Positions 4,080-57,737 of a DNA stretch of 64,000 nucleotides are shown here, piece after piece. This DNA comes from Salpingoeca rosetta (lineage: Eukaryota; Protista; Choanoflagellata). The notes under the pieces are model-generated. The model worked only from the letters and a program-made list of their open reading frames with translations, made no database searches and was not told the origin of the DNA. The stretch covers positions 408,724 to 472,723 of the forward strand of contig JAWQFM010000003.1 in assembly GCA_033442325.1 (NCBI GenBank). Reading direction: 5' to 3'. Both the position numbers and the translations under genes were made by a program. How positions within the stretch are numbered: position 1 is the first letter of the stretch; each line of letters begins with the position of its first letter.

Positions 4080-7537
<3,458 letters not shown>

Positions 7538-32918: not shown

Positions 32919-35306
<2,388 letters not shown>

Positions 35307-36434: not shown

Positions 36435-37741
36435 TTAAAGGTGCGTGTCAGCTATGGACATGCGGCGAAGCTCAACAGGCCTGACTGCAGATTCATCCAA
36501 GACCGGCAGCTGGCCAGCAGTGATGCGAGTGCTGTCCAGTGACGTGGGCTCCTCAAAGTCTGCAGTGTCGCCACTGGCGCCCTCTTGAAGATGAATGCCA
36601 GCGCGAGAGCCATCCGCACCAGCATCAAAGCGATGTCGATACTGCAGGTGCTCGTGTTGCGCATGCAAATCCACGGTGGTGCTTGGAGACATGTTGAGGG
36701 CCGTTTCATCCACGCCTTCGCCAATCACAAGGCCCGGCGCCGCAGTCAGCGCCGCAATCAGATCGTCAAACTCAGCAGTGGTGTCGTCCGCTCGCATGTA
36801 TGCCCCACTCTGTGCCGTGTCCAACGCAAAGGAGGCCCCCGCAGAATGCGATGAAGCCTTTGCTGGTGAGAGCGATGACTGTGACGGATCATCCAGGTAC
36901 TTTTGGAACGCCATGCTCGGGGATTGCAGGTAGCGCCCGTCCTTCTTGTCCAGGACCACGACGCCGCCCTGCTCGCTCCTCATCTCCAAAGCGTCTGGAA
37001 TGCCGACTGACGCCTTGCCACTGTGCCGCTGTCGGCGCAGAGTGATCACAACAGCCGCAAACATGAACACCGCGAGCAGCCACAGCGCCACCGCCCACAG
37101 CACGAGTGCCAGGGAAGAAAACAGGGCGCCAAACAGTACAGAAAGGCCGATGACGATGTTGATGCCAGCGGACACACGCAGATTGTACAGGGCGTCAAGG
37201 GTGGAGATGCCCTCGTCCTGCTCAATCGAGAACTGCTGCGCATTGAACCGGCAGTGCGATGCTTCGAGGCGCACGAGGCCGAACAGTGTCAGCAGCACCG
37301 CCACGCTGCACGGCGCAACAAAGGCCGCATACAATCCAATCTCTTGCTGAATGAACGACCTGCGACACCGCAACGCAGAATTGAGGAGGAGTGCGTCGTG
37401 TTGGTCGATGTATGTGTTGGTGGGTGTTGTGTTGGTCGTGGGTGAGACAACGCTCAGCATGTGCTTACACCATCGTGCACGCGTACAACAATACACACGA
37501 GCAAACAAGGAAAGCAACCCCACTCACGGCATGCGCAAACGGGCAAGCACAAATGTGTTGCACGTGTTTGATTTGTCACAGCAACTACATGAACACGCAC
37601 GTGTGCTTTCAAACCAGCGCACTGCATCCATACACATATCACATCATTCACGAGCATCCCTAGTCATTCACAAACAAGCACAGACACAAACACTCGAACA
37701 AACAAACACACACACACACACACAAACACAAGCACAACCAT

Positions 37742-37808
<67 letters not shown>

Positions 37809-40800
37809 AGCATAACCATGCACAAGTACATACGGCCCTGAGTCTTACATTCGCCCGAATCGGCCAACGTCGCCGTACGTGCCCGAAATACCAGTGTCGG
37901 AAGCGTCGAGGGCAATGCCAAAGTAAATAGCGACAATGAACGCTGGCACCACCCAGCACAACACGGACCACAACAGCGCCGAGCGCGCTCGCACAATGGC
38001 CGACACGTCAACAAGGTCGGCGCAGTACTCGCGAGTGCCTGCAAGCACGGCCGCCGTTGCCAGCGCCAGCGTCACCAGGAGCAGGTAGTGGGTCAGCATG
38101 CCGGCGGCAAACGCCAGCGTCTCGTCAACACTCGCACTGCGAACCGTATAGGCTCCGATGATGAAGAGCGAGCCCGCCAGGAACAGAGACACAAACGCCT
38201 GCGCGCGGTAGGAGCTGGCGCGACCGCGGCCCCACACCAGGTGTGTCAGCAGCAGCAGCACGCACCCAGCGAGCACAACGCCCGTGCCAGCCATGACAAC
38301 CAGCGGCACAGGGTCGGTGGTCTCCTCCAAGACGCCGTAGGTGTGTGCCATGTGCGTGCAGGCGCATTCCAAGGTGCCTTGGTCTCCAGCATCAATCGCA
38401 AGCTCGCACCCGTCTGTCAGCCACATGCCCTCGTCCCAGTACGCACACCGCGGCTGGCGCACCTCCCCTGCGCCAGCACTGTCCGGGCTGAACGCAAACG
38501 TGAAGGTGTTTGTGGGGCCAAGTTCCGCCAGGTCCTCATCCGCGACACTCGCGTGCACAAGGACGCCATCAACAGCCCGCGTGCGCGCAGGAACGGGGAA
38601 CGTGTTGTCCTGCGCAGCAAAAGCAATTGCCACCAGCGTGTTGCACTGACTGTCGTCCGTTTCGGTTGTGTTTGTACTGCCGCCAGAGAGCAGCGAGTCC
38701 AGCGGCTGCAGGACATCGCCCAGGAATGGCGGTGCGTGCAGCTCAACCGTGGTCGCTGCAACAGGGAGGGATGACACGCGCCCGCTGAGCGATGCGGGCC
38801 GCGCCCGGGTCACCTCCCACGTCGCCCGTTCGCCAACAAACGAGCGCGTGCAACAACAAGAACAGCCTGCACTGCCGTCAACGGCTTCGTCGCAGTCCAC
38901 CAGCAACGCAGCGCCAAACTTGCGCAGGAGCGTGTCGATCCAGGGCTGCGGCTGCCGCTGCAGCAGCAGCGCATCCACAACGCCCGCAACGGCCTGCAAT
39001 TCAACCACAGTTGCCCTCCTCCTCCTCCTCCTCCTCCACATTCCCTCGTCGTGGCCGGCCTGACGTGGATCAGGTTGTGTATGTGAAACGGCAGATGCAG
39101 CGCCAGCGCCAGCAGCAACATCAGTCGTGCTTGATGGCACCACCTCAGCGCTAGTGCCGACGAAGGCGTCCAAGATGTTGGACAGGGCGGCGTGCATGAA
39201 GAAGAGCGAGTCTGAGCACACGCGATCTGTCTCAGCAAGTCCACTGGCAATGTCAGCGACGCATGTGGTTGAGGAAGCAATGCCGTCGTCAAGCACGACG
39301 TCTGCGTTGGACAGCCCCAGGCAGCCTTCGGGAACCAGCACCACGCACACGGTCCCGTCATCGCCGTTGCGGCTCCCAAGCGTGCCAGCCACCGTGTTGG
39401 CGGCTCCGCCCTGGCTTGACAGCTTGTCTGCAAACACGACAGTGACGCTGGCAAGCCGGCGAGCTCCGAGACGCGCGCCCTGCAGCGTCGTGTTGGATGT
39501 CACCAGCTCCACCGTGAAGTTGCCAATCAGGCCAGCGCCAAGCGCATCCGCAGACGGAATGGTGAGCGCAATGCTGGCCGCTGTCTGCCCCGCCACTAGA
39601 GAAACGCTGCCTTGTATGGACACGCTCAAGGTGTCGAAGCGGCCGCGGAAGGCGCGGTACGAGACTGCAAAGCTGCTGTCCAGGCCTCCCGAGCGCTCAA
39701 CATCGAGCACGGCCTGGTTGTTGCGAACAAGCAGCGCCACACTGCCCTCTGCAAACTGCACAACGCCCAGCGGGTCGTCGCTGGCGGCGACGGTCACCAC
39801 CACGCTGTTGGCATTGCGCGTCAGCACAACCGGTGTGTCAACAGCGTCCACGCAGGGCAGACTGCTGCGGGAAGGACACGCAAGCACGCGCACCAGCTCC
39901 ACGACAAACACCTCCTCAAACTCAGGGATGGCGTCGTCGAGAATGTCAAAAGACAGCGTGCTTGTGTTCTGGCCAGGCGCAAACGCAACCACTCCACTTA
40001 CCGGCGACACATCATCACCAACCGCATCAGTGGCGCCTGCTCCTGCTGTTGCTGTTGCTGCTGCTGCTGCTGTACTTGCGATGGGCGTTGTCGATGCACC
40101 ATTCGTGACGCTGCCTGCCACACGGATCGCCCAGGACACCAGCAGGTATCCCGATGCACCGGGAACATATGACCCGCCAGACCGCACGAGGGTCAGGGAA
40201 GCGCGTGAAGATGCCGCTGCTGTCGCCGCTGTGGACGTTGTTGATGCGGACTCGAAAACGCGAAGCCCACTCGACGCCAGCGCCGCCTCAAACCCAACCG
40301 TGCCGTCAGCAACCTCTAGAGGAATGGCAAATGCTGTGCCGCGGGCACTGTCATCAATGGCCACGCCCGAGTTGTCCGAGGACACGGTGGCGCTGGCGAC
40401 ACGCACAAGCACGGTCCGGCCCGCGACCAGGGCCACGCTGTCGCTGATATCAAGCTGGAGGCTCTGACGGGCCTGACCCTCGCTCAACGTGACAGAGAAG
40501 ACGCAGTCACTGCTGATGGTGGCGACGCCATTGGCTAGGGGACAGCTGCTCAGGTCCGCCATCTCCTGTGCTGTGGGTACGGCGGTGGCTGTGGCAGTGG
40601 TGCTGTTGCTTGTGGGTCGCGCGTTCAAATCGACCACGCAGGTGACGACGACTTGATCCACGGTTCCAAACGAGCGCAGTACGTCAAAGACGACGAAACG
40701 GGGCGCCCGCTGGGCAACCTGCACCACTTTTGCAGGGGCGCTCATACCAACAATGCCGTATGGGTCATCGCTTGGGGGCACAACAATGGTGACGCTGCGC

Positions 40801-43551
40801 GCTGTGTCATCGATGCTGCCCTGGTCCGCCACGTCCGCCACAAGCCGCGTGAGGGACACAACAAACACCTCTTGCAGCTCAGGTGTGCTGTCACCAAGCA
40901 CCTGCAGCGTGAGCACAGCGCTCTGCTGACCCTGCACAAACTCCAGCATGCCAGATGGCGGGCTGATGTCCGTTGACACGTCCTGGGATTGGGTTGTTGC
41001 TGCCGCAGAGGAGGCCGTCACCTGCCAGAACACAGACACGGCTCCGAATAGGCCAGCGCTGCGCTGGACGGTGAGCTGCACCGGCGTGGTGGCTGCAGCA
41101 GTGCCCGCGCTGGGCTCCTCAACCACGATGCTCCCTGCACCCGCAAACGCAAACCTGCCAGCGGCATCGTCACTGGCTGCCAGGACCACGCGTGTGGTCG
41201 TGCGGCCCAGCACGGCCCCGCCAAACACCTGTGTGAGGCGAACAATGAACGACTCGCTCTGCTCTGGCTCGTCGTCATCGGTCAGGGCAACAGAAAAGGA
41301 GGCCACCACCTCTCGCGACGCCAGCGTCACCTCGCCCGACTGCACGGGGAAGTCTACCCCAGCCTGTGCTGCTGCTGTTGTTGCCGCTGCTGGTGAGGAG
41401 GATGTGCCCCGATCTTCCTCCTCCACCGTCCACAGCACGGTTATGTCCCCGTGCGTGGCCGTGTCGCGCAGCAGGGAGAGGGTCACTGTGCCCTGGCTCT
41501 CCTGCGCGCTCACCACGTCGCTGTCCAGCGACACGCGCCCGTACGTGAACACGCCCTCCGTCACAGAGAGTGCCGCCGTGCTGCGAGTAGCGTCAATACC
41601 GGGGACAATCCCAGCAGCGTATGCACTTGCAGATGTGGTGCCATCTGCCAGCGACACGCCCATCAGCTCCGCGCCGAGCGTGCCGGAAACCTCCAGTCTC
41701 AGCGCCTCTGGTATGGCTGCCTGCACCCGCACCGTTGTCTGTGCGGACGCGAATGTACCCGTGCCCGTGTGTTCCCACGTCGTGGCACTCACGTCCAAGA
41801 ACAGGCTTGCCACGGGGGCCGCGTACACCAGACGGTACGAAAACGTCAGCGGTCCAAACGTGCCGCCAGCGCGGTGCACGTCCAGCACAGCCGTGCGCGT
41901 TTGTGTGTCCAGGTCTGTGACGATTGCGATGCTGCCGTCAGACACTTCGTCCCTGTTGTTGGTACTGGAGACGTTTGCTCGCTCAAGGTAGAGGGTGCCC
42001 GCAGGGTTGTCGTTGGCAACCACGACGAGGGCAACAAGCTCAGTGGCAAGGCTGACCCACGTCGCGTTGTGGAGTGAGAAGGTCAGCAGGCACACTTCGT
42101 CCCGCTCAGGAAGCTCATCAGAGGGGATGTTGAGCACAATGTCCATGCTTTCTGAGACCGACACTTGGCCTTGCCGGGGCTCTGCACAGGGCACAGCGCT
42201 GGTGGGTGTACCTGAAGCAGCTGTCCCTGTTGCCTCCTCAACGCTGCTGAGTCGCCAGCGAAGTGTCGCAGGCAAGGCCGCGGATGCCGTTGTCGGCGCA
42301 AAGCGTCCATGCTCACGTTGCAGCCTCAGCGCGAGAGCTTCGCCTTCGTTGGCAATGACAACACCTGCCACACCACCGACCGTGACATCGCTTCCAGCGG
42401 CCACCTCGGCCAGATCTGGGCTGGCGAGCCGCACAACCCCTCCAGCAGCGCTCTCCGGCACCAGCGCCGTTGCCTCGAAGGTGTCGTACGTTTGCACCAC
42501 CACGGGAGCACCAGTCGAGGGCGAGGGTACCGTTGCTTGCACTTGTGTCAATGTGATGCGCAGTCGCGAATCGGTCACCAGCTTCGCATCCAGCGAAAGT
42601 GGCAGCCGCAAGAGCGCAGCGTGCTCTCCAGCCCGCAGAATTGTCACCGGATCTGCCTGCGCAATGTCGAGCAAGCCCTCCACAACGAGGAAGCTGTTGT
42701 CGCCGCCATCGCTGCTGTATGCCGCGGAAATGTGGGCAACAATGTCACCAAATGTTCCGCCTGCTCGGGTCACGTTGATGGTGACAAGGCGGCTGACTAG
42801 ATGACGATCAGATGTTGTGACACTGTTGTTTGCCTCATTCGATGTCGTAGCCAGCGTCACCTCCGCGGTGGAGGCAACGTGAAGGGCGCCAAATGGCTCG
42901 CCACTCGCTGCGATGGTAACGCGGACCTGGCTGTTGTTGTGCAGCAATGTAACGCCAGGGTTGCTCAGCTGCACGAGCGAAACGACAAACGTCTCTTCCA
43001 GCTCGTCTTCACCGTCGGCAACGCAGAGCACGCGAATACGTGTTGATACCACACGTTGTCCCTGGGTTGAGTTGAGCTGAACGGTCGAGAGTGATACGTC
43101 TGTCGAGATGTCCGCGCGTGTGGCTCCAGCCCCAATTGGGGACAGTGCCAGCTCTGCAATCAAATCATCATAGGCATCCGGCAGCCGACGCACAGCCAGG
43201 GTAATGACTTCGCCTTCCACGCATGTGATGGCACGCTCGCCGCCCTCCGTTTCCAAGAACACGCCGCCGCGCGGGTTGTCGCTTCCAGCGATGACCAAGT
43301 CAACATGCCCTCGCTCTGCGTCAATGTGTGGAGCAGATGCGACACTGGCAACGGCGGCATCGTCGCTGCTCTCTTGTGCGGCAGGCTCGGGATGGGAGGA
43401 CAGTGTGATGCGCACCTGCGCTGCCACCTCTGCAATGTCGTCGGGGTCAATGGTTAGCACAAGCGTCTGGGTGCCTTCGCCCTCATCAAATGTCAGCATG
43501 CCGGCCATTTCGCGCAGGACATGCTGCAGGGCGCTTGCACCACCACCACCA

Positions 43552-43588
<37 letters not shown>

Positions 43589-46500
43589 TTGTGGACGCGT
43601 TGGCTACGCTACCAACAACATCTGCCCGCCAGAACACAGTCGCCGCTGCCATCACAGGGCCCGTGCGAACAACCTTCAACAAAACCCGCACAGGATCTGC
43701 ATCCTCTGGCTCTGCGTACATGTGCTGCATGGCGAGGGTCTCTTGGGAGAAGGAGAACGTGCCGTAGTACCGGTCGTTGGCAGGCGTGGCAATGCGCAAG
43801 GACCGCCGACCTGCATCGCTGTCTGCACGTGCACCATCCTCCACAGCCACAATGGTGAGGGCAAGGGCCTCCTCCCCCTCGGGCTGCTGATCGTTGAGGA
43901 ACACCAGCTCAACTTCAGCCTCCGTCTGCCCATCGGTGAACTCAATCACCGCCCGTGGCAGAAACGCGTCACCCTCAACATGCACATTCTCAAGCAGGGC
44001 AATGTCAACGCTGGTACTTCCTGCATCACCCAGCATGTGAAGGAGCCAGGGCTCGGTGTGTAGCCCCGGTGCAGCTTCAAGCGTGGATGGCAATGCCGCG
44101 CCGTTCACCCAGGCCGAGTAGCCCAGATACGAGGTGTCGATGGCAGTGACGTGGTCACCCACACTTGCCTGTGCCACGGCTACAAAGCGACTGGCCTGCA
44201 CATCATACACGTAAGCCACAACGTGGTGCGCGCTGATGTTGTTGTTGCTGCTACTGCTGTTGTTGTTGTTGCTGTTGTTGCTGCTTGCATCTTCGTCTTG
44301 TTCGATGAGCGCAAGCAGTACTGGTGAAAACGACACACTGCTGCTGCCACTGCTACTGACATGATTGAGCGAAGATACACCACGTACACCAAAGGATGGT
44401 AGGCCAAGTTGGTCCACAACTGTGTCTGCGGAGAGAACAACAATGTGTACGGGCACCGTATCAGCAGCACCACCGTCTCGTGTCGAAAGCACCTCAACCA
44501 CCACTGGCGGCATATCAGGGTCACGCTTCACGCCGATGAGAAGCGCCCTCGTGTAGTCCTCCTGAGCATCTGCCCCACCAGCAAACACGTGTGTCCATTG
44601 TGCCACGCCGGCCAGGGCCATACTCACGTCCACAGGTTCACCGCTCTCGCTGGCAGCGGCATCAGCTGTCACCTGCAACTGCTCGAGGGTGCCTTGCGGG
44701 GTCACGACAAACGCGGCCGCCGTGCCGCTGTCCGCCGACGCAACAAGCAGCAGCGGAGACAACACCGTGGTCACGACCCCAACTTCTTCTGCTGTTGCTT
44801 CTGTTCCATCTGCACCAACACTGTGGCGGACAATGCCGGATGTAGCGTGGAAGCTCGTGGGGAAGACGCCCTCAACAACACTGGTCTCTGCCAGCGCGCC
44901 ATCCTCCGTGACGCGCAGCAGCTTGATCTGCCCCGTCAACTGCCCTTCGTCGTTGTAGTCGCTGCCAACCGCAACATACGCCGTGCTGTTGTTCACCGCA
45001 ATAAACGCCGTGCACGTTGGATTGACCGTGCTGAGGGTGGCGGTCGGCACCATAAACTCGCCGTCCAGCATGTACAGGGTGGACAGGGACGCCGAGGGGA
45101 TGATGCTGTTGCGCAGACTGAAGACGGGCAGAAAAACAAACACGTTTTGTCCAACACGCCCCGTGGCCAACGACCGCACGTCTCGGTTGCTCAGCACCTG
45201 CTGGGCTTGTGCCGGTGCAACTGTTGTGGCACCAATCTCGTCAGCATTGTTGTTGTTGTTGTTGTTGGTCTGCATCGCATAGAGAACAGTCTGCTGACGT
45301 GTCGCCACGACCGCAAACAGGGTGTCGCCTTCAGCAAACGTCACCACGGCTTCTGGCTCTGCCTGCATCTGCACCTGAGGCCACTCGGCCACAGAACGCA
45401 CCCAATCTGACAACACGCCTGTGCTGGAAGTAGCTGTTTCTGCGGACGGCGATGTCACTGTCGAAAACAGTGACGATGCCGCTGCATCTGTTTCTTCTGC
45501 TGTGTCTGCGATTGCCTGCTCAGCTGTGCGTGCAAGTGAGAAGGCGAATTGGCCGGCCGCGCCGGAAGCGCCTGTGGCCGTCTCAAAGTCGAGAGCAACA
45601 TGTACAGTCACGTTGCCAAAGGCCCCGCCCTGTGCCATATCACGCACAAGCAGTGCCGAGTACACACCCGCAGCCTCGTTGACCCTGACCGTGCCATCGC
45701 CAGCAACCACATCGCCATTCATGTGCACAATTCGGAACACACCACGCGCGTTGTCGTTCTCGGCAATCACGATGCGCGTCTCATCCAAGGACCCAACCTC
45801 TGGTGGCAGGGTGTAGCTCTGTACAGCTGGTGGCACCATCTCAGCCACGGAAGTGCCATCAGCCAAAGACAGGATCTCCAGCTGTGTGATGCGCACGTGG
45901 AACGCCTCTGCCAGCTCGGGATTCGTGTCATCAATCACGTCAATGTTCACGCCGACGGCGTCGCTTGTGGCCGGCAAATCCACGAACGTGGTGAGAAGCA
46001 CAAAGTCTTCCACGGGAACTGCGCGCTGACGCGCAGGGTCTTGCATGCTGCTGATGGCTTCCAAGTGCACGCGAACGGTGCCCAGGCTGCCGGAGCCTGG
46101 CGCGCGCACAACCGACAAGCGTTGTCCCTGGCGCAGTGCTGAGTCACCCTCCGTCGTGTCAACCTCAACCTGGGACAGCTCATACACGCCAAGGGCACTG
46201 TCGCTGCTCTGCACGTTCAGCAACACTTCCTGTCTTGCGCTGGGATCAAACACGCCGTTCTCAGACACAGACGTCAAGCGTAGCACAGCCTGCTGAGCCA
46301 GCTCTGGCACTGTGTCGGAGACCAGCTCCAGGTGAATCGGCAGCCGCCGTGTTTGCGCACCAAAGAAGGTCAGTTGGCCCGTGTGTGGTGGCAGAAACTG
46401 TGCCCGGGCTTCTCCCGTCAGCGCCCAGGTGACAACAAGTTCGCCACTCGTCGCAACGTCAAGTCGCTGAACCCACACTGTTGCGTTGCTGGACAGCCCG

Positions 46501-49500
46501 CTTGTGCCCACAGCTCCATCATCGCCATTGCCAGCCACCACCGTGCCGTCATCGGCTGCGTCTTCACTCAACAGGATGGCTGCGCCAGCCGCTTCAAATG
46601 CAACGCGATCGTCGTCGGGACGGGCGACAACCGCCACCTCGCTCTGTGCTGTATCCAGCTCCCCACCGTTGTATGTCCGCAAGAGCCTCAGCGCGTATGT
46701 GTTGATGACATTGGGAACACCGTCATCCAGCAGCTGCACATCAAAGGCTGCTTGCATCACCCCAACGCCCAGCGTCACGTTGCCCTGGGCGTGGTCAAAT
46801 CGTACTGCTGGTGCATCTGCCTCGATGCCGCTGCCAGCATGCACAATCTCCCATTCAACAAGAATCTCTTTAAGGGCGGCCACGGAACGTGCGACGCTGA
46901 TGTTGAACACATTGCCTTCTGCAGCGCTGATGCGCCTGGCACTGGTGCTGTTGGCCGCGCCGGCAACACTGACCAGCCCGCCCGGGTTGTCGCTCTCCTC
47001 AACTTCCAATCGGACCGTGCTGTTCCTGCCGCTGGTCACGCTGGCCACGCCGCTGGCGTTCACAAGGGACACGTCAAACTGCTGCACAATCTCGGGCACA
47101 GCATCATCCACCACAAACACATCAAAGCTCACGCGCATCTCACCCTCCGCAAACACAACGCAGCCCTCTGCAGGCGACAGCTGCTGCGCTACCGAGACAG
47201 AAGCTCCTGTGGCGTGCGTTGTTGAGTTGTCTGTCACCGTTGACATGGTATCCGTGCTCGCGTCTGACGTGGCTTGCTCCGCAGCAACCGCCATCGCCAT
47301 CCAGCACACCGTGGATGTGCCCTTGGTGCTGACAGACCGCTGCACATCAAACTGCACGCGCTGCCCTTCCGCGCCAGCCACAACAGCGACACTGCCTTGA
47401 CTTGGTGACGTCATTGCTGGCGGTGCCGCCGCTGCTGCTGAGAGAGAGAACAGGCCATTGACGTCATCGTTGGCAGCAACACCCACAATCGTGGGCGTTG
47501 CAACACATTCTGGGCCAGCACCTGGGTGGGTGTACCCTTGTGGCGAGACAAGCTCGCATTGCACGATGTCCACCACAGCCAGCTCCAACCCTTCGGGCAT
47601 GGTGTCATCTGCCAGCGGCAACACGACGAGCGCTTCCTCTGCGCCAGACGGAATCCGTACAGTAGCTGTCTGCGTGCTGCTGTTTTGCAAATCGGCCAGG
47701 GAGATGCTGCTGATACTGTCAGTCACTGTGGGGAACGCGTGCAGGTGAATGTCGAGAACGAACAGCAGTCCAAGATCCGTGGTTGCGCCCGTACTTGTGT
47801 TTGCACTTGTCACAGTGTCTTCCTCTGTAGCTGACACGACGAGGTGACCCGCCGCATCTTGGTCGTACAACAGGCACAGGTCACGTGTGCTGCCAGCAAG
47901 CACGAAGGCAGCGCACTCAAAGTCAGCCTGCGTCAAACATGCACGCGCGCACGCGACAGCGTCTTCATCGCCATCACGGGCAGGCACCATGGCCGTGAAG
48001 TTTAGCAGCGCTTCGGTGGTGGCTTGAGCTGCCCCAGACGTGGCGTTGTTCTTGCTGCTGCAGCCGCTTGTCATGGCGGTCGTGGAGTTTGTGGCTGTGG
48101 TTGTGGTGTTTGATTCTGGGCCCATGCTAGCCGTGTCCAAGCAGATTGGAATGGTGATGGGGGACTGCGACATGAACCAGTCAAGTGGGTCGAGGGGGCG
48201 AATGCGAACCGTCACATCCACCTCGCCCAGCAGCCCCAAACTGCGGACAACGCGCAGCGCCCCACCGGCAGGGCTGTCCTCACGCACAACCTGGTTCTCG
48301 GGAATGAAGAAGCGCCCAAAGTCGTATGCGTTATCGGATGGCAATACTGTCACGTTCGCTGTCTGTGCGCTTGCACGCACGCCCGCCATGGCGCCGGCCG
48401 TGGTGGACACCACATTCAGGGTGAGCTCAAACCACTCCGCACCCTCCGGCACCTTGTCGCCGACCACTCGCGCCGTGACGTTAACCTGCCTCTCCCCAGG
48501 CTGGAAGTGCACAATCACTGAGCCGTTGCTGACCGGCACAACGGAAGCAGTCGACGTCGATGGTGAGAGCACCACTTCGTGCGATGACGTTGTGCCGTCC
48601 GCCATGGACAGCACCAGTTCAACGCTCTCCGCAGCGCCCTGATCGCGCGTCACAGTCACAGTCACCACCTCGTCCTCCGCGGCCACGTACACGTGTTGGC
48701 TTGCGTGCTGGGTGGACTTCAAGTGCCACAGCGACAGGCCAAAGAGGCCCGCGGGAAAGTCGTCTTGAGCAACAGCAATGTCGATGACACCCATGTTGTC
48801 GACGCCTTGGACCTGTGCCATGCGTGCATCCATTGTCGTGGCGGGGAGGCTAAGCCCAAGCCGCACGGTGTAGTTGAAGTTTGCAGCCGTGTCATCACGA
48901 ACTTGCACGGCCACGTCGCTTTCGCGCTGGCCTTCTTCAAACACCACCCACGTGGGTGAAATACGGAGGTTGTTTGTGTCGGCCAGCGCAAACGTGGCCG
49001 TGTCCAGGACGCGAGCGTCGTGCTGCACTCCAACAAAGACGATGCTTGCATTCACGGCTACCAGCGCCCCACCCGTGCGGACGATATGCATGGTTGCGTT
49101 GTCGCCCTCGCTCAACTCCAGACGTGACTGCGCATACTGCACAGTGCCACCAGGAAAGTCGCTGTGGGCAATGCGCAATTGCGCTGTGTCTTGTTGGCCG
49201 AGCACGCCCTTGCTGCTGGGCGCAATGCTAAGCACCAAGGTGGCGCTCTCCGCGAGCTCGGGCACAGCGTCATCGGTGATTTCCACATCAAAGTGCAGCG
49301 TGGGCTGCGTTTCCTCGCCGTGCACGCCGGAAGCAAACACCAGTGTTCCGTTTAGCCCCGTCGACACCGCAAAGTCGCCTGCAGACGCAAGCCCCGCACT
49401 CCCCATGTTCGTGTCGTTGTGTGATGTTGCACGGCTGGATGTGTCAATGGCCCACATGACCATCGTGTCCTCAAACGTCCCGGCAAACCGGGTCACACCA

Positions 49501-52500
49501 ATGCGCGCCACTTGCCCTTCCTCAGTATGGACAATGGACGAGGCAAACGCGAACCGCCCATAAGGGTCGTCGCTCTCCTCAATCACCACCACGCGCTTCT
49601 CGGTGTTGCCGGTGCTGTCCGTGGCAATGCTCAGTGCACCACCAAGCGCGTCGCTGGCAGCAACTGCTATATCGTCATTGCCACTGCTGCTGCTGCCTGC
49701 GTCAGTGCTCAACACCAGCCGCGCGTTGCTCAGGTGCACAAACACCTGCTCCTGCACTTCAGGCAACTCGTCGTCGAGAATGTCAAGCGTAATCACCTTC
49801 TCCGCCTCACCTGCAGCAAAGTCGAGTGTCGTGTGCAGACCAACATAGTCCAGACCCTCCACGCTGGCATTGGCCGTGCTGTACGTCTCCCGAACATACA
49901 CCGTCCACTCGCTCAGGACATCAGCGATGTCGGAAATGCCCACAGTGGGTTCACGTTGAAGAGCAAAGAGCGCACAAGTGAAAGTGGAGGCGGCACCATT
50001 GCTGCCTCTGACATTGCGTGTATCTGTCGCGTTGAGATCAGCGGCATTACTGGTGGTGCTGTTGCTGGTGGTGTTGGGTTGAAACCAGCCAAACGCCACA
50101 CAATCGACGGTGGCGTTGGTGATGCACATGCTTGCACACTCCTCCACTTTGCTTGCAGCTGACCAGCTTGCAACGGTGACGTCGCTGACGTCCATGGTGC
50201 TGGTGCTATTCCCGCTGCTGTCGCCTGTGGTTGCGCTGGCGTTCTGAGTCTGTGCAAGCATTTCGGCCACATCAACCATTGCCATTGGCAAAGAAAAGAG
50301 TGACATCAACTCGTCTGCCGTGTCCACATCAACGAGAACACGACCCTCAGTGCCACGCAGCCGCTGCACGCGGATGGTCGCCTGCGACGACTCCCCATCA
50401 CCGCCCTCCGCCACCCGTGAGCGAAGCACCGCAAAGGAGAACAGGCCGTACGCGTTGTCGTTGGCTGCAATGCCAATGTCCAGTGATGCTGCGGCGCCTT
50501 GCGCCACAGAGATCTCGGCACCGCGCGCAGAGAGAATGAGCAGCGAAAACGCCTCGGGCAGTTCAGGTACCGTGTCATCGACGACAGTAAAGGCGAGGCT
50601 TGCTGTGGTTTGCCCAATTTCCAGCGTCGTCGTGCCGGCCGCAGGGACAATATCGCCAGTGTCCGGCTCAATCGCCCACTGCACCACGACGCGATCGTAG
50701 GCGGACGGTCCGCGGCGCAGGGTCGCCGAGAATGCAGCGCCCTCCTTCAGCGACAGCAGAGTGGGCGGTGCCGGTGCAAACGCCACAGCACACTCGGGGC
50801 AAGAGCGCAGCACGAATGTCGCCTCGTCACGCACAACGCGGCTTTCACCCAGGCTGTTAGTGACGTTGACAATGTACACGGTCAGCCCTTGCCCGTCAGG
50901 GATGTCTGCCACGACAGAGGCACTGAGAGGCACCACCACTGTGGCGCGGTCGCTGTCAGCAGCATCGCCATCAGTTACCTCACCAAACCACCTTGCTGGA
51001 AACACCACGGTGGCACGGAAGCGGCTCAGGTCGTGTGTGGTACTGCGCTGTGCTGCTGTGGCGCGAGCAGCAAGCTGCACGACGACGTCACCGTAGTATC
51101 CGACGCTCCTCTGTACGGTCACAGTCACGTTTCCTTCTCCGCGCAGAACATCCACTGCACCCAGCGGCTGTACGAGCTCAAGCACGCCATATGCGTCGTC
51201 GCTGGAGTCCACTACCACCGCAGCATCCAGCAGCACAGTGCCCGCACCAACGACCGTCGCGCCTTCACTGCCACGCCGCGCAGGCAGGAGGGGGATGAGG
51301 GATCCAGTACCGGAAACTGCTGTACTGGATGCTGTTGTGGCTGTCAGGGACAGCGTGCCTTCCTTTGGCAGCTCAGGTACCGTGTTGTCCACCGGGGCAA
51401 GCGTGAACCCTGCCTCTGTCTGGCCGTGGGCAAGCACCACTTGCTGTGGAAACGTCAAGTCGTCCATGCGCAAGGTGGCGCTTTCTCCCTGCTTGATTCT
51501 GGAGATTTGCTCCGAGGCCGCGCCCAAGGAGACGTTCAGGTACACGGCACCAAATGAGCCAGCAACACGCTTCACAGACAGCACGGCAACGGTGTTGCCT
51601 GTCTCAGCCAGCGTAACCATGGCTCTTGTCCCGTTGGAGCTGCTATCAACACTGATTTGTGCTTCACCGCTGTTGATGCGCGTCGTATTGACACTCGTGC
51701 CATTGCTGTGGATGGTTGTGTTGACGTACTCCCACAGCAGGACGCCAAAGCGCGCCTCTTGGGGTGGCGTGACGAGAGTGGTCACGCGGGGACCAAGGCG
51801 CGGCGAGACCCCCTGTGGTGTTGTCACTACCGTGCCATCCTGCTGCTCCACAGAGATGACGGTTACGCAGAAGCGTGTGTTCTCTGCGAGCGACAATGAA
51901 AACGTGTCGGGAATGGGCACATTCGCTGATGCGACTGCCTGCCCTTCCGCAAATGGCACTTGCACAACCTCCTGCAGACCTTCCTCCGCCACGGAAACAC
52001 AGCCGGCGTTGTTGTGGTCAATGTGCAGCCGCACGCGTGCGCGAATGTCGGAGAAGAGCCCTCCAGAGCGTGCCAGTGTAAAGGACAGGTTGCGGTGCGT
52101 TGCAGATGCGATCACGCCGGCAGCAGCAAGGTCAACCACGCCATGGGGGTCGTCATTGGGAAGAATGGTCACAATGGCCGTCGATGCGTCCTGGGCAATG
52201 CTTGACGCACCAGGCGTCTCGCCCAAGGTCACCGCTGCCACTTGCTCAAGCTCCGGCACGCTGTCGTCCACAACGCGAAGCGTCAGCGTGGATGTGCTTT
52301 GGCCATCCTCAAACCACACGCTGCCATTGTGCGGTTGCAAAGAGGCTGCAGCGCCGCTGCCATCGGTGCTGACCGTGAACGGGACCGCCAGGCGCCCAAG
52401 CGTGCTCACTGTGCGCTGCACCGACAAGGTGATGGTGCGGTTTGTCTCTGCCACCGTATTCAGCCCAAGGACGAGCGACGCCGGTGCGAAGCGAAAGAGC

Positions 52501-55500
52501 CCACGCGCGTTGTCGTTTTCCGGGATGCGCACCAGCGTGTGGGTCGGGGCACCTGCTACCATAGCGTCCAGCTGCAGGTCCTCTGCTGCTAGCGTGCCCG
52601 CCCCGCTCACGACAGAGCCCAGCTTCACAACAAAGCCTTCGTCCAGCTCGGGCTGGCCGTCGGCTGCGATGGCAAACGCAACCTGCGCCACTTGCTGTCC
52701 GGGTGCAAACACCACCGTCGCAAGCAGCTCATCAACGGAGACCGGCACCAGAGACACAGCGCTGTTGCTGCTGCTGGTGGTGGTGCTGGCGGCGGCGGTG
52801 CCAGAGTTGTTATTGATACTGTCTGATGCTGTCGCTGAGAGGGAAAAGTCGCTGCCGGCAAGCGTGGGAAGAACGCGTGTTGGATTCAGGGTGCTTCTAT
52901 AGGCAGCGTCGCCGCCCAGTGGCGTGGCGATGTGCTGCTCCGTGCCGTTCACCAGCACATGCAAAGTGACCCGCATGCTGCCAAACAGGCCGCCGCGCCT
53001 GACGATGCCAACCTGGGCACGCTGACCCTCGCTCGACACAACAAGCGAGGAGAGGAGCTCGGGGCGCCCGTACGGGTCGTCGTTCTCCAGGATGGCCACC
53101 TGCAGCACGTCGCCGGCCATGATTGCTGGCTCAGCGGGCTGCGTGGCGGTCGTCTCAAGCAGCACGGGCGAGCCCAGCACAACCCACACCACTTCGGTCA
53201 CCTCTGGCACAGCGTCCTCAAGCACGCTTAGCACAAGTTGCTTGTGCGTTTCGCCGTCCTCGAAGATGACGCTGCTTGTGCTCAACAAAACGTCGCCACC
53301 GGGACCGGTGTCGGCAAAAGCTGAGGCCGTTTGGTTGTAATCATAGTTTGCATTCGGCGCTGCTGCGCCATTGTCAGGGTCACCGCCATCGTCGCTGCTT
53401 TGGTTCTGCAGCTCCCGCGCCCCAATGAGCTCCACAGGAACCTGCACAGTGCCCTCGGTGCCAAACGTGCGCGTCACGGAGATGGTGACGGCTGCCGGCT
53501 CTGACACCGCCACCGCACGGATAACGCGCAGGGTAAAGGTGCCTTGCTCCACGGAAGGAACAACGGTGCCATCAGCCGACAGGTGGACGTCAAATGGAGC
53601 CGAGGTGTCGTCGAACGCGACATGAGCACCGCTTGCACCGGTGATGTTGGCGCTGAAGAGCCCGTGTGGGAAGTCGCTTGCCTCCAGGGTGATGCTGGCC
53701 AGGATGCGCTGTGCATCGAAGCGCGCGCCACCGCTCAGCTCCGTCAGCGCAAGCACAAACTCGTCCTGGTACTCTGGGATTGTGTCGTCCTCGATGCTGA
53801 TGATGATGGGAACAGAGGCGACGCCTTGCTCAAGCACCACCACCCCAGATGTCGGGTGCAGTGCGGTGATGGTGCTAGTTAGGGCAGACCGGAGCTCCCA
53901 GCCAACCGTTGTGCGGCCCACTGTACCTTGGGCGCGGTGCACAAACACCGTCATGCTGCCGTCTTCCTCCTGAACCCGCAGCGTGAGCGAGTCGTTGCGA
54001 ACGCCAACCACCCCATACGGGTCGTCGCTGGCGAGGACTGTCAGTGCAACGGTGCCATTTGTGATGCCACTATCGCTGCTGCCGTCGTCACCGCCACTGC
54101 CATTCGCAGCATACTCCGCGTCGGTTTTGAGCCTCGCACCACCGGTGGCGTTGATCAGCCGCAGTGTAAAGGCAGCGTCCAGCTCGGGAAGCGTATCGTC
54201 AGCGACGGAAATTGCAATGGATGCTTCCCGCACACCATCCCCAAAAGTAACCACGCCACTGCTACGCACAAAGGCTGGTGGCGGTGCTGTCGTTGTCATT
54301 GTTGTTGTTGTTGGTGGTGGTGCTGGAGACTGCGGGACAATCTCCCACTGGGCCTGCACAATGCCAAAGGCGCCGCGTGTGCGAACAACGGGCACCAGCA
54401 GCGTGCTCGGAGCAATCGCCCCTGTACCTTCCTCGCCGGGCGATGGGGGTTCTGCAAGCGTAACAGAGGCACCAAAGTCGGGTGCGATGGCCAGAACACC
54501 ATTTGCATCGTCACTCGCAGGCACGACAATTGTCTTGCGCGTGCCTTGGGGCGCAAAGGCCGACTGGTTTGTGTAGCCGCCAGAGATGCTGGTGAGCGTG
54601 AGGATGTGCGTGCTCTCCAGCTCCGGCACATCGTCGGGGACGATGGGGACAACCAGTGTGGCGTTGATGGCCGCTTCTTCAAACGTCAGGGTGCCGTTGA
54701 GGGTGGAGAAGCTCGCGGCGTCACTCGTGGCGAGGTGCCACGCAACCTCCACTGCACCAAACGCACCCGCATTGCGTTTGACGACAATGCCGGCGGGTTG
54801 CTCGCCCGCTTCGGGCTCACGCACGACCACAAGCGCTTGGTCCGGCTGCTCAAAGGAGAAGACGCCCGATGCCATGTCGTTGGCGGGAATCACGACCGTG
54901 CAAACGGTCTGGTTGCCGAGGGCGGTGGCGTGGGTGAGGTCCTGATTGATGGGCCGCACGCTCTCGAGCACAAGCTGCAGTGCCTCGTCCGCCTCGGGCT
55001 CGTCGTCGTGCAGGACGGTGACGCTGACCGCCTGTGATGCCTGACCCTCCGTGAAGAGGAGTGCAGAGACGGCGTCAATGTAGTCCACCCCACGCGAGGC
55101 GGCCGCAATGCCAGGTGCGCCCGCCAGGATGCGGTAGCGCACAAGCACGCTGCCCCTTGTTGTCGTGCGCGTGATGGCGACGGACGCCGTGCGGAAGAGA
55201 TCGTTCGACGGCTCAGGCACGGAGACATACGCGGCGCCCAGCTCAAACACGCCCAGGGGCGCGTCACTCGCTTCAATGGCAAAGTCGATTGCGAATGCGC
55301 TGGGGTGCGCCGTGGAGATGACGGCGCCGTTGGTGGCGTTGCCGAGCGTCAGCGTGAACACCTGCCTCAGCTCCGGGATGTCATCGTCAGTCGCAGCGAT
55401 GACAATGTGCCCGGTCGTCTGTACGTCCTCAAACACGAGCGTGCCGCGCCAGCTGTCCAGGTTGTCCGCAGGGGACCCAAATTCCACCACGTCCGGGGAT

Positions 55501-57305
55501 GCCGATGCCAGTGCTGCCGCTGACGGTGCCACGCGCCAGTCCACGGTGACGGTGCCGTGCGTTCCCCACAGGCGCTGCACGGCGACGCTGAGCGGGTGCG
55601 TGCTGCCTTCCAGCAGACTGATGGAGGCGGTGTCTTCGAGCTGCAGCAGGCCGTTTGGGAAGTCATTGCGCGGTACGATGACCCGCGCCGTCGTGCTTGT
55701 GCCCAGCGCTGCCTGGTCTGCGCTGAAGCTGATGCTGCTGGCCCGTGTCAGCTGCAGCGCCCACTCCTCCGTAAACTCTGGGATGTCATCCGCGGCGACT
55801 TCAAACTCGAGCAAGGCCCATGTTTGGCCTGGCTGAAACCCCAGCACGCCCGATCTCGGCGCGGACGCTGTGTTGTTGGACGTTGCTGCCCACTCGAGGC
55901 GTGCCTCGCCAAACGCGGCGCCGGTGCGGGTAACGTTGAAGATGGCCACGTGCGGCTGCAGTGCGTCCTCATCGGGCTCTGCAATGACAACCACGGGTGA
56001 AGCACCGCTGCTGGCGGTTGCGGTGTTGAGCTGAAACTGGAATTGGCCGCCAGCGACGTCGCTCGCTTGGATGACGACGAGCATGGACGAGTTTTCAAAC
56101 ACACGCGCTGCGGCGGTGCCTTCGGCGGTACCAGACAGCGCCAGAGTTACAACAAAGGCCTCGTTCGGCTCCGCGACAGCGTCCGTGCTCAGCGGTACGA
56201 GGACGGTTGCCGTTGTTTGGCCCTCTGCAAAGGTGACAACCCGAGAGACAGGGGTGTAGTCCTGCGCTGGTGTTGCTGTTGCGAGGACGAGCGGGTCGTC
56301 CGCGAACCAGTCGAAGCTGCTCTGGACGGCGGCAGAGACCGCACTGGCGTCGCTGGTTGTCTCGACGAGGACCTGCGCCGTACCCAGCGCGCCGGAAGCA
56401 CGGGCAATGGTGAGGGCGGCGGCGTGGCTGGCGGTGCCTGTTTTCTCGCGCACGCCCAGCTCTGCCAGGGCGAAGGAGAAGCTGCCCAGCGGGTAGTCAT
56501 TGGCGCTGATGACGACGTCCATGCTGGTCAGGTCGGAGTTGGCGGAGAGGGAGGCGCCGCCGCTGACAACCTGGGTGAGGCTGAGCACAAACGACTCCTG
56601 CAGCTCAGGCACGTCATCGTTGATGACGGGAATGATGAGGTTGACGGAGGAGTCGCCCTGGTCGAAGACGAGGGTGCCCGATGCGAGGGCAAAGTCGTCC
56701 TCGCCGCCGCCGATCTCCCACGCCACGGTCTGCTCGCCAAAGCGGCCGCCAGACCGCCCAATGACGGCAATGAGCGCGCTGCCCTCGCTTGTGACGGTGG
56801 GCCCGCTGGGACCACCAAAGTTGATGAAGGCGATGGTGCCGTACGGATTCTCGTTGAGCGGGACGGTGACGGTGAACGCGTCCTGGGCTATGGAGACGCC
56901 GGAAACGGGCGCAAGGAGGCTGAGGCGCAAGGCGAAGGTCTCGTTGAGCTCTGGCCCATCGTTTGACTCAACCACAAACACCCACGACGCAGAGGAGCTG
57001 CCGGCAAACAGGGCAAACTGTGCCTGCATGGGGAAGAAGTCGTCAGACTCCAGCGTCTGCGTCTGGATGGGGTCGACGGTGATCTCAACAATGACGTTGC
57101 TGGGCAAGGGCTCCGATGCGGACACGAGCACGGACAGGGCGTCGCCTTCCCGCGCAACGGCGCAGTCCTCGCCCTGCGCCAAGGAGGCGCATTGCCTCTG
57201 GATGCTCAGCTGTGTTGTGGCGTGTGCGGGACTCACGACACAGAGCGCAAGCAGGCACAGCATGGCCACCACACGTGCCATCGCTGGCCACCTTTCCGCT
57301 GTCAT
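36435..57305 (-). CDS. ADGRV1: ADGRV1/VLGR1-like giant adhesion GPCR (~6,793 aa): signal peptide, ~30-35 Calx-beta repeats, EAR-like propeller region, two PAN/apple-like inserts, GPS, 7TM, PDZ-binding tail; exons 57305-37849 and 37359-36435
   Basis: Signal [21 protein letters not shown]. About 28 clear DDxPExxE.F.V.L / I..NDxPxG motifs by manual count, plus degenerate copies. [17 protein letters not shown]...CACTHM. Seven TM segments across the AT|GTAAGA...CGCAG|G junction. Tail contains EFDDLIAAL and ends [13 protein letters not shown]. Confidence 0.92.
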
Positions 57306-57367
57306 TTTGTTCTGGGCTCGTACGGGGCGCACCTGCAACCCCTTTATGGCGTACGTGTGCGAGAGAA

Positions 57368-57403
<36 letters not shown>

Positions 57404-57737
57404 AGTGTGTGTGTGGATGTGCGTGTGTGTGGGTGTGGATGTGTGTGTGTGGATGTGCGTGAGTGTGTGTGTGGATGTGTGTGTGTGTGGATGTGCGTGA
57501 GTGTGTGTGTGGATGTGCGTGAGTGTGTGTGAGAGCGATGAACAACAAGTTGACTTGAAGGCGGCGTGCAAAGCAAACAAACTAATCTCTGTGAGACACC
57601 AGCAAACCAACACACACAGAGAGACGCACGCATATCCTTCACCTTTTCAGGACCGAGGGCCTGACAATGGCACCGCAAGTAGCCTCGACTGGTGATGGCG
57701 AGGTCGCAAAGGGCGGACGTTGAAACCTTGTGCCACT

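What the first reader, a model, noticed from the sequence alone, without database searches (positions are those of the whole stretch)
36435..36780. Cytoplasmic linear motifs nearly identical to human ADGRV1 (EFDDLIxAL and VELRRxxIADTHL-COOH)
Seen: [12 protein letters not shown] (~36780-36745) and terminal [13 protein letters not shown]. Established, from recall: human ADGRV1 contains EFDDLIFALK and ends VELRRIPIADTHL, a class I PDZ ligand for whirlin/PDZD7/harmonin. Inference: two short motifs in a disordered tail have been conserved over a very long time. Conservation extends well beyond the 4-residue PDZ ligand, and the EFDDL motif suggests a second conserved, poorly characterised partner. 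RRMS also creates a possible PKA site next to the PDZ ligand.
Basis: partly seen in the sequence, partly recalled or inferred. Interest (0 to 1): 0.75.

Follow-up and report, generated by a model that had tools for sequence, protein, structure and literature searches.

The report
Choanoflagellate ADGRV1 tail keeps whirlin-docking motifs
The last exon of the Salpingoeca rosetta relative of the human Usher-syndrome receptor ADGRV1 encodes a disordered tail that keeps the two short motifs which dock the mouse receptor onto the scaffold whirlin, so this docking code probably predates animals; the gene family and both motifs were already known separately.

Summary
On the minus strand, [12 protein letters not shown] lies at 36744-36779. 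The protein ends [13 protein letters not shown] at 36438-36476, with the stop at 36435-36437. The window is Salpingoeca rosetta and the gene is PTSG_11855, a 6785-aa protein with Calx-beta repeats, a GPS site and seven membrane segments. It is the published choanoflagellate orthologue of ADGRV1. RNA-seq reads confirm the 489-nt intron that joins the tail exon in frame.

PDB chain 9fte_A (ADGRV1) and vertebrates from sharks to birds carry EFDDLIFALK and VELRRIPIADTHL. Both matches exceed chance in shuffle tests.

The second motif is not an unknown site. In mouse numbering it falls inside the "NTD-binding motif" (aa 6240-6261). Wang et al. 2023 showed that this helix binds the N-terminal harmonin-homology domain of whirlin.

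Nine unnamed environmental ADGRV-like sequences share the layout, seven found through GAIN/7TM similarity and two as relatives of one of them. Eight carry both motifs and one carries the helix with a different class I end. Named receptors of other adhesion-GPCR families among the same hits lack both.

A whirlin-like gene lies 1.56 Mb away on the same contig. Only its PDZ parts could be confirmed by computation. No binding test was possible.

Verdict: a new member of a known kind, of moderate interest.

The parts
36438..36476 (-). Extended C-terminal PDZ-binding motif [17 protein letters not shown]. The class I core T-H-L occupies the last three codons. The stop TAA is at 36435-36437.
   Evidence: It has 11/13 identity to vertebrate VELRRIPIADTHL. 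pLDDT rises to about 70 here in an otherwise low-confidence tail.
36456..36467 (-). RRMS (Ser6779, position -6): a basophilic-kinase (PKA-type R-R-x-S) consensus next to the PDZ ligand.
   Evidence: Sequence. All ten non-vertebrate tails with a DT-type end have S/T at -6 or -7 with R at -8/-9; vertebrates have Pro at -6. Phosphorylation was not tested.
36747..36773 (-). EFDDLIAAL: the core of the amphipathic helix homologous to the whirlin-NTD-binding motif (NBM) of mouse ADGRV1.
   Evidence: AlphaFold2 places the only helix of the tail at P0001 6672-6684, which is 36741-36779. The mouse NBM is aa 6240-6261.
36438..37037 (-). Cytoplasmic tail of about 200 aa (P0001 6586-6785), predicted disordered apart from the one helix.
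   Evidence: Hydrophobic-segment scan. AlphaFold2 mean pLDDT is 56 over the last 136 aa.
36438..37359 (-). Coding part of the last exon. It holds the third base of a split Met codon, TM5-TM7 and the tail.
   Evidence: RNA depth is 15-65 across it.
37360..37848 (-). Intron of 489 nt (GTAAGA...CGCAG) that carries a long (GT)n microsatellite.
   Evidence: Sequence. The joint is seen in 36 reads of three RNA-seq runs and in one contig of a fourth run.
37849..57281 (-). Giant first coding exon (6477 codons plus 2 bases). It holds the signal peptide, many Calx-beta repeats, the GPS site (...[13 protein letters not shown]...) and TM1-TM4.
   Evidence: Pfam gives Calx-beta at 3.4e-69 and 1.1e-21, and GPS at 1.1e-05. 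P0001 is 100% identical.

Best explanation
The stretch is the 3' end of the Salpingoeca rosetta ADGRV1/VLGR1 orthologue (PTSG_11855). Its roughly 200-aa tail is predicted to be disordered and carries two short linear motifs inherited from the common ancestor of choanoflagellates and animals.

(1) An amphipathic helix, EFDDLIAAL, with the hydrophobic pattern F-x-x-L-I-x-x-L. It is homologous to the NTD-binding motif of mouse ADGRV1, which docks into the hydrophobic alphaA/alphaB cleft of the N-terminal harmonin-homology domain of whirlin.

(2) An extended class I PDZ ligand, [14 protein letters not shown]. It is homologous to the ADGRV1 ligand that binds the first PDZ domains of whirlin and PDZD7.

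Together they would give two-point docking of the receptor tail onto a whirlin-type HHD-PDZ scaffold, most likely at the actin-filled microvilli of the collar.

Shown here: the motifs, their homology and family-wide conservation, the predicted helix, and expression and splicing.
Taken from the literature: the mouse binding data, and the presence of whirlin in choanoflagellates.
Inferred: that the S. rosetta tail binds the S. rosetta whirlin-like protein, and where in the cell this happens.
For: Gene identity.
- Calx-beta repeats, GPS site and seven hydrophobic segments.
- 100% identical to S. rosetta PTSG_11855, and 24-25% identical to fish ADGRV1 at E about 1e-200.
- Orthology is published (PMC12716839; PMC4942974).

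Motif homology.
-, with statistics.

Mouse function of both motifs.
- PMC10039067: deleting the PBM only weakens whirlin NPDZ12 binding (Kd about 1.4 to 9.5 uM). Deleting the NBM abolishes binding to the whirlin NTD.
- PMC10238197: the deafness allele Y6236fsX1 removes the last 63 aa, which hold both motifs, and loses whirlin binding and ankle-link localisation.

Family-wide conservation that does not depend on the tail.
- phmmer with GAIN+7TM+tail against 1.84 billion representatives gave 60 hits.
- The top-ranking ADGRV-like hits P0126, P0128, P0131, P0136, P0143 and P0174 carry both motifs. P0127 carries the helix motif and ends -SAL. The shark ADGRV1 carries both.
- The named hits among the 20 looked up are ADGRG, ADGRF, CELSR or uncharacterised proteins, and none of them carries either motif.
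- Two further relatives, P0192 and P0193, carry both.

Structure.
- AlphaFold2 predicts a single helix exactly over [13 protein letters not shown]. Confidence reaches about 70 only there and at the C-terminus.

Expression.
-.

Partner.
- A multi-exon locus on the same contig (G000:C3, about 2,030,180-2,035,100) has three PDZ domains by Pfam at exon level. Read by eye, it also has two HHD-like helical exons in the whirlin order HHD-PDZ-PDZ-HHD-PDZ.
- Whirlin is reported in choanoflagellates (bioRxiv 10.1101/161695), and whirlin HHDs are reported across Opisthokonta (PMC8048344).
Against: - No binding was tested or modelled for the S. rosetta pair.
- The whirlin-like HHD1-PDZ1 region is split over five exons, and no stored protein id for it could be obtained.
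- Exon-level searches recognise only generic PDZ similarity. Scribble and PSD-95 score above whirlin, PDZD7 and harmonin. The HHD-like exons give no PDB or Pfam hit.
- S. rosetta has at least 126 PDZ matches, so another PDZ protein could be the ligand's partner.
- The spacer between the two motifs is about 100 aa in S. rosetta against about 40 in vertebrates.
- PMC10238197 assigns the mouse PBM to whirlin PDZ2, whereas PMC10039067 assigns it to NTD-PDZ1, so even the mammalian geometry is unsettled.
- The nine environmental sequences carry no taxon name.
Confidence: 0.7

Rival explanations
1. EFDDLI acts mainly as an acidic dileucine sorting signal, [DE]xxxL[LI], read by AP-1/AP-2/AP-3 adaptor complexes. 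It would control endocytosis or delivery of the receptor rather than scaffold docking. The two roles need not exclude each other.
For: EFDDLI fits [DE]xxxL[LI] exactly. So do the vertebrate motif and P0126, P0127, P0136, P0174, P0192 and P0193. The motif lies in a disordered tail, as such signals do. The consensus itself comes from established knowledge, not from a tool.
Against: Three orthologues break the consensus: P0128 (GFDDLL, no acidic residue at -4), P0131 (EFDSQLF) and P0143 (TMEDLL). All three keep F/M at the first position and L seven residues on, with a hydrophobic pair between that is shifted by one place in P0131. Conservation extends past the dileucine to x-A/S/T-L. AlphaFold2 predicts a helix, whereas dileucine signals bind in an extended form. 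In mouse, deleting this stretch abolishes whirlin NTD binding.
Confidence: 0.12
2. The motifs are homologous to the vertebrate ones, but in S. rosetta they serve a different partner set. This could be another of the many PDZ proteins, or another alpha-alpha-hub domain such as PAH, and the whirlin connection would then be an animal innovation.
For: There are at least 126 PDZ matches in the genome. The whirlin identity of the C3 locus could not be confirmed beyond its PDZ domains. The HHD2-like exon resembles PAH-type clusters only weakly (score 0.86).
Against: Both halves of a two-part code that fits one scaffold (HHD next to PDZ) are kept together in most ADGRV-like sequences found. That is hard to explain if the partner changed. 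Whirlin is reported in choanoflagellates.
Confidence: 0.13
3. The resemblance comes from chance, convergence, contamination or recent transfer from an animal.
For: Short motifs can arise convergently. Over the whole tail, phmmer gives only E = 0.028 against the PDB.
Against: Shuffle tests. The motifs are collinear within orthologous proteins. The rest of the gene is only about 24-26% identical to vertebrate ADGRV1. The gene sits in a 2.8-Mb S. rosetta contig, has the local GC content and (GT)n repeats, and is spliced and expressed. Several other divergent lineages share the motifs.
Confidence: 0.02

Closest known systems
Vertebrate ADGRV1 (VLGR1/GPR98) cytoplasmic tail: NTD-binding motif plus class I PBM, the ankle-link (USH2) complex with whirlin, PDZD7 and usherin
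   Same: The protein family is orthologous: Calx-beta repeats, GPS site and seven membrane segments. The tail is disordered. EFDDLIxAL is 8/9 identical and VELRRxxIADTHL-COOH is 11/13 identical, and they come in the same order.
   Different: The spacer is about 100 aa against about 40. S. rosetta has Ser at -6 (RRMS) where vertebrates have Pro (RRIP). Outside the motifs the tail is unalignable, whereas vertebrate tails are about 80-97% identical throughout. Pfam finds no LamG/pentraxin or EAR/EPTP domain in the S. rosetta ectodomain. Binding was not tested.
Cadherin-23 internal NBM helix bound to the harmonin N-terminal domain (PDB 2KBR)
   Same: An amphipathic helix in a disordered cytoplasmic tail docks into the alphaA/alphaB cleft of a harmonin-homology domain, and a PDZ ligand on the same tail gives a second contact. 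PMC10039067 superimposes the two.
   Different: The receptor family and the scaffold paralogue both differ. Sequence similarity of the helices was not computed here.
Choanoflagellate aGPCR subfamily theta, the ADGRV orthologues (Garcia De Las Bayonas and King, eLife 2025)
   Same: This gene belongs to that published group. Both the N-terminal and C-terminal fragments were reported as homologous to metazoan ADGRV.
   Different: The main text of that paper does not mention whirlin and has no discussion of a PDZ ligand or of tail motifs. Its supplements could not be read.

Membership tests
ADGRV1/VLGR1 (adhesion GPCR subfamily V) | Very large ectodomain built from many Calx-beta repeats | tested here: met
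   Pfam Calx-beta at 3.4e-69 (7 stretches listed) and 1.1e-21 in the two halves of the 6567-aa ORF.
ADGRV1/VLGR1 (adhesion GPCR subfamily V) | GAIN/GPS autoproteolysis site directly before a 7TM domain | tested here: met
   Pfam GPS at 1.1e-05. Seven hydrophobic segments follow it, and the context is [13 protein letters not shown].
ADGRV1/VLGR1 (adhesion GPCR subfamily V) | 7TM region related specifically to ADGRV rather than to other aGPCR families | tested here: inconclusive
   Pfam 7tm_2 is not detected. phmmer of GAIN+7TM+tail hits shark ADGRV1 at 1.5e-07, but ADGRG-, ADGRF- and CELSR-like proteins score similarly. Published phylogeny gives 83% bootstrap for orthology.
ADGRV1/VLGR1 (adhesion GPCR subfamily V) | LamG/pentraxin domain and EAR/EPTP repeats within the ectodomain, as in vertebrates | tested here: not met
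   No PF13385 or PF03736 hit in S. rosetta (precomputed Pfam), while the fish orthologues have both. These may be vertebrate additions or too divergent to detect.
Class I PDZ-binding motif | [S/T]-x-hydrophobic residue at the free C-terminus | tested here: met
   ...D-T-H-L followed by TAA. The terminus is confirmed in the annotated protein and is covered by RNA reads.
Class I PDZ-binding motif | Actual binding to a PDZ domain | not testable with these tools
   The partner's PDZ1 is split between exons. No complex job was sent.
HHD-binding motif (NBM) of ADGRV1/Cad23 type | Short amphipathic helix in a disordered tail, with conserved hydrophobic positions | tested here: met
   AlphaFold2 predicts one helix at P0001 6672-6684 with pLDDT about 70. 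All nine environmental sequences and the vertebrates keep F/M at the first position and L seven residues on, with a hydrophobic pair between, shifted by one place in P0131.
HHD-binding motif (NBM) of ADGRV1/Cad23 type | Positional homology to the experimentally defined mouse NBM (aa 6240-6261) | tested here: met
   With 9fte_A numbered as 5884-6298, EFDDLIFAL is 6249-6257 and Tyr353 is Y6236.
HHD-binding motif (NBM) of ADGRV1/Cad23 type | Binding to a whirlin-type HHD in the same organism | not tested
   HHD1 of the S. rosetta whirlin-like locus is recognised only by eye. There is no PDB or Pfam hit at exon level.
Acidic dileucine sorting signal [DE]xxxL[LI] | Consensus kept across orthologues | tested here: inconclusive
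   S. rosetta, the vertebrates and six environmental sequences fit. P0128, P0131 and P0143 do not.

The most novel reading that the evidence does not exclude
The two-part docking of ADGRV onto whirlin (helix into HHD1, C-terminus into PDZ) arose in the common ancestor of choanoflagellates and animals. There it would anchor Calx-beta link fibres between collar microvilli, making it an ancestor of hair-cell ankle links. In that ancestral state the PDZ contact would be gated by a basophilic kinase acting on the conserved R-R-x-S/T at -9 to -6, a switch that vertebrates lost (Ser to Pro).
Probability: 0.3. Interest if true: 0.65.

Novelty: new member of a known kind. Interest (0 to 1): 0.45.

Why it matters
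ADGRV1, whirlin, PDZD7 and usherin form the ankle-link complex. Losing it causes Usher syndrome type 2, and the human deafness allele Y6244fsX1 removes exactly the segment that holds both motifs.

Both docking motifs are intact in a choanoflagellate and in several other non-vertebrate lineages. This indicates that the receptor-scaffold interface, and not just the two proteins, is older than animals and under strong constraint.

S. rosetta can be edited genetically and has a simple microvillar collar. The function of this interface could therefore be tested there without a hair cell. The site that differs from vertebrates (RRxS against RRIP) suggests a regulatory step to look for.

Tried and rejected
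1. Complex prediction was not sent. The S. rosetta whirlin-like HHD1-PDZ1 region is split over five exons.
 - the word search only sees proteins of 0.55-1.75 times the query length;
 - the longest stop-free stretch holding a real exon is 262 aa;
 - a metagenome scan with the PDZ1 exon returned bacterial RseP and an unrelated PDZ piece.

2. Exon-level recognition of the HHD exons failed. There was no PDB hit and no Pfam family. The ESM Atlas gave only PAH_ZNF598-type clusters at 0.86, which is a lead at best.

4. The word search with an eel tail listed vertebrates only. It found 336 hits and showed 120 of them.

5. The word search with P0143 gave two more unnamed relatives and no named invertebrate.

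6. Supplements of the eLife GPCR paper are not held.

7. A second tail copy in the genome was not found. The only other hit, on C9 at E = 0.08, is uninformative.

8. Chance, convergence and contamination were rejected.

Full report
**What is there.**
- On the minus strand, a 6567-codon open frame (37845..57548) is followed by a 362-codon frame (36435..37523).
- Pfam finds many Calx-beta repeats and a GPS motif in the large frame.
- The large frame ends at a GTAAGA donor and the small one is entered at a CGCAG acceptor. Removing 37360..37848 (489 nt) joins AT|G into a Met codon and keeps the frame.
- RNA-seq reads from three runs (14, 18 and 4 reads), plus one contig of an older run, show exactly this joint. 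They cover the last exon at depth 15-65, and their orientation indicates a minus-strand RNA.
- The word search identifies the protein as Salpingoeca rosetta PTSG_11855 (P0001, 6785 aa, 100% identity). Fish ADGRV1 are the next full-length relatives, at E about 1e-200.
- Checked exon by exon, P0001 equals exon 1, plus Met, plus exon 2.
- Seven hydrophobic segments follow the GPS site. The last exon holds TM5-7 and a tail of about 200 aa.

**The observation.**
- [12 protein letters not shown] is at 36744-36779. The protein ends [13 protein letters not shown] at 36438-36476, followed by TAA.
PDB chain 9fte_A (ADGRV1) reads QEFDDLIFALKTGAGL and IVELRRIPIADTHL. PMC9274004 uses the mouse peptide VELRRIPIADTHL.
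- Shark, eel, bird, lizard and lungfish proteins are identical at both motifs. I did not fetch the human protein.
- Against shuffled tails, the EFDDLI-region alignment scores 62 versus 31 +/- 5.4, reached by 1-2 of 2000 shuffles.
- An 11/13 match anchored at the C-terminus did not occur in 200,000 random draws.

**What the motifs are.**
- -DTHL is the published class I PDZ ligand shared by ADGRV1 and usherin (PMC10039067).
- The second motif also has a described partner. Wang et al. 2023 found that removing the PBM from the mouse tail (aa 6239-6298) only weakens binding to whirlin NTD-PDZ1-PDZ2.
- They found that a helix of about 20 residues upstream, the NTD-binding motif (modelled with aa 6240-6261), sits in the alphaA/alphaB cleft of the whirlin N-terminal harmonin-homology domain, as the cadherin-23 helix does in harmonin (PDB 2KBR). 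Deleting it abolishes NTD binding.
- Chain 9fte_A numbers as mouse CTF 5884-6298 (construct in PMC10238197). Its Tyr353 is then Y6236, and EFDDLIFAL is 6249-6257, inside the NBM.
- The deafness allele Y6236fsX1 (human Y6244fsX1) deletes the last 63 aa, which hold both motifs. It loses whirlin binding and correct localisation.

**Is it a family trait?**
- To avoid selecting by the tail, I searched 1.84 billion cluster representatives with GAIN+7TM+tail (P0001:6000-6785). This gave 60 hits at E <= 0.001.
- Seven unnamed environmental sequences and the shark ADGRV1 carry the motifs:

| Sequence | Rank | Helix motif | C-terminus |
|---|---|---|---|
| P0126 | 2 | EFDDLLYAL | FDMRRVTIADTHL |
| P0127 | 3 | SEFDDLIFNL | ends soon after in -SAL, itself a class I end |
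| P0128 | 4 | GFDDLLYAL | FDLRRVSIADTHL |
| P0131 | 7 | EFDSQLFTL | VRLSQIADTRL |
| P0136 | 13 | [11 protein letters not shown] | NNRLSIADTHL |
| P0143 | 20 | MEDLLKTL | KRRISIKDTPL |
| P0174 | 51 | [11 protein letters not shown] | ITRLSIADTHL |

- Of the 20 hits I looked up, the named ones are ADGRG-, ADGRF- and CELSR-type receptors or uncharacterised proteins. None of the named hits carries either motif.
- Two relatives of P0143, on contigs of up to 1.5 Mb, read EIDDLLYTL / EIEDLIYTI and KRRISIADTHL.
- Crude BLAST groups the environmental sequences into at least three lineages. P0143 is nearer to vertebrate ADGRV1 than to S. rosetta, at 122 versus 49 bits.
- P0174 comes from a 4.7-kb contig with one uninterrupted frame.
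- None of these sequences has a taxon name, so the range across named phyla is still open.

**Structure.**
- AlphaFold2 on the last 136 aa, with these tails as the alignment, gives a disordered chain with mean pLDDT 56.
- It predicts one helix, residues 23-35, which is P0001 6672-6684 ([13 protein letters not shown]).
- Confidence of about 70 is reached only there and at the C-terminus.
- This fits NMR and CD data showing that the free mouse tail is disordered (PMC9274004).

**The partner in the same genome.**
- A first-stage note (s1-445035) pointed to a whirlin-like locus 1.56 Mb downstream on the same contig.
- I fetched it as L003, which is G000:C3:2026000-2035999.
- On the minus strand it has many small exons. 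PDZ1, PDZ2 and PDZ3 are seen by Pfam at exon level.
- Two helical exon groups lie before PDZ1 and between PDZ2 and PDZ3. By eye they resemble harmonin-homology domains...LNDHEKVQLQHALTEF... / ...LDTPQKRDLLRPLRFLIP..., and ...YLHGRLPLKDMARYLLAQL....
- Computation did not confirm the HHD reading. The PDZ1 exon hits generic PDZ domains ahead of whirlin, PDZD7 and harmonin.
- The literature reports whirlin in choanoflagellates and whirlin HHDs across Opisthokonta.
No complex prediction was sent. This is the main gap.

**Mechanism and rivals.**
- Best reading (0.7): the tail docks at two points onto a whirlin-type HHD-PDZ scaffold, an interface inherited from the common ancestor of choanoflagellates and animals.
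- EFDDLI also fits the acidic dileucine consensus. Three orthologues break that consensus while keeping the helix's hydrophobic positions, so I rate it as a possible secondary role (0.12).
- A different partner in S. rosetta cannot be excluded (0.13).
- Chance, convergence or contamination is effectively excluded (0.02).

**The kinase site.**
- RRMS places Ser6779 at -6.
- All ten non-vertebrate tails that keep a DT-type end have S/T at -6 or -7 with Arg at -8/-9.
- All vertebrates examined have Pro at -6.
- This is a real pattern and fits a PKA-type consensus. Nothing here shows phosphorylation.

**Novelty.**
- ADGRV orthologues in choanoflagellates are published, as are whirlin in choanoflagellates and the mouse NBM and PBM.
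- I found no paper stating that the choanoflagellate tail keeps both motifs. The eLife 2025 catalogue does not mention whirlin and has no text on a PDZ ligand.
- An earlier agent of this scan reached the same reading (s1-432417). I had reached it before seeing that note.
- My own-genome search finds only one copy of this tail. That note therefore probably describes the same gene.
- Verdict: a new member of a known kind, moderately interesting, and testable in a tractable organism.

Noticed in passing
G000:C3 about 2,030,180-2,035,100, minus strand (L003 4180-9100): A whirlin-like gene made of many small exons, in the order HHD-PDZ-PDZ-HHD-PDZ. It lies 1.56 Mb from the ADGRV gene on the same contig. 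Only the PDZ parts are confirmed by Pfam; the HHD parts are read by eye.
   Followed up: partly
window 36456-36467, and the tails of P0126, P0128, P0131, P0136, P0143, P0174, P0192 and P0193: S/T at -6 or -7 with Arg at -8/-9 is present in every non-vertebrate ADGRV-like tail that keeps a DT-type end. In all vertebrates examined it is replaced by Pro at -6 (RRIP). This may be a lineage-specific loss of a phospho-site next to the PDZ ligand.
   Followed up: partly
P0127 C-terminus: In one environmental ADGRV-like protein the helix motif (SEFDDLIFNL) is followed after nine residues by the end of the protein, -TSVSAL. This is a different class I PDZ-type terminus with almost no spacer.
   Followed up: no
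window 37849-57281: Pfam finds no LamG/pentraxin or EAR/EPTP domain in the S. rosetta ectodomain. There are two Cys-rich stretches, one with a weak PAN_1 hit (E = 0.007, below the cut-off), and long Thr/Ser/Ala low-complexity runs.
   Followed up: partly
window 37669-37819 and 36380-36425: Long (GT)n microsatellites lie in the intron and directly after the stop codon. The reads tool skipped both as repeats, so the 3' end of the mRNA could not be placed.
   Followed up: no
window 32919-35339, minus strand: The neighbouring 806-aa open frame has a run of about 110 residues that is almost entirely Thr. It is followed by many repeats of about 22 aa ending ...LTS[VI][DN]F.... No Pfam family reaches its cut-off.
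   Followed up: partly
window 36597: G>C in 3 of 30 reads of one RNA run (X22) only. It is probably a minor allele or an error.
   Followed up: no
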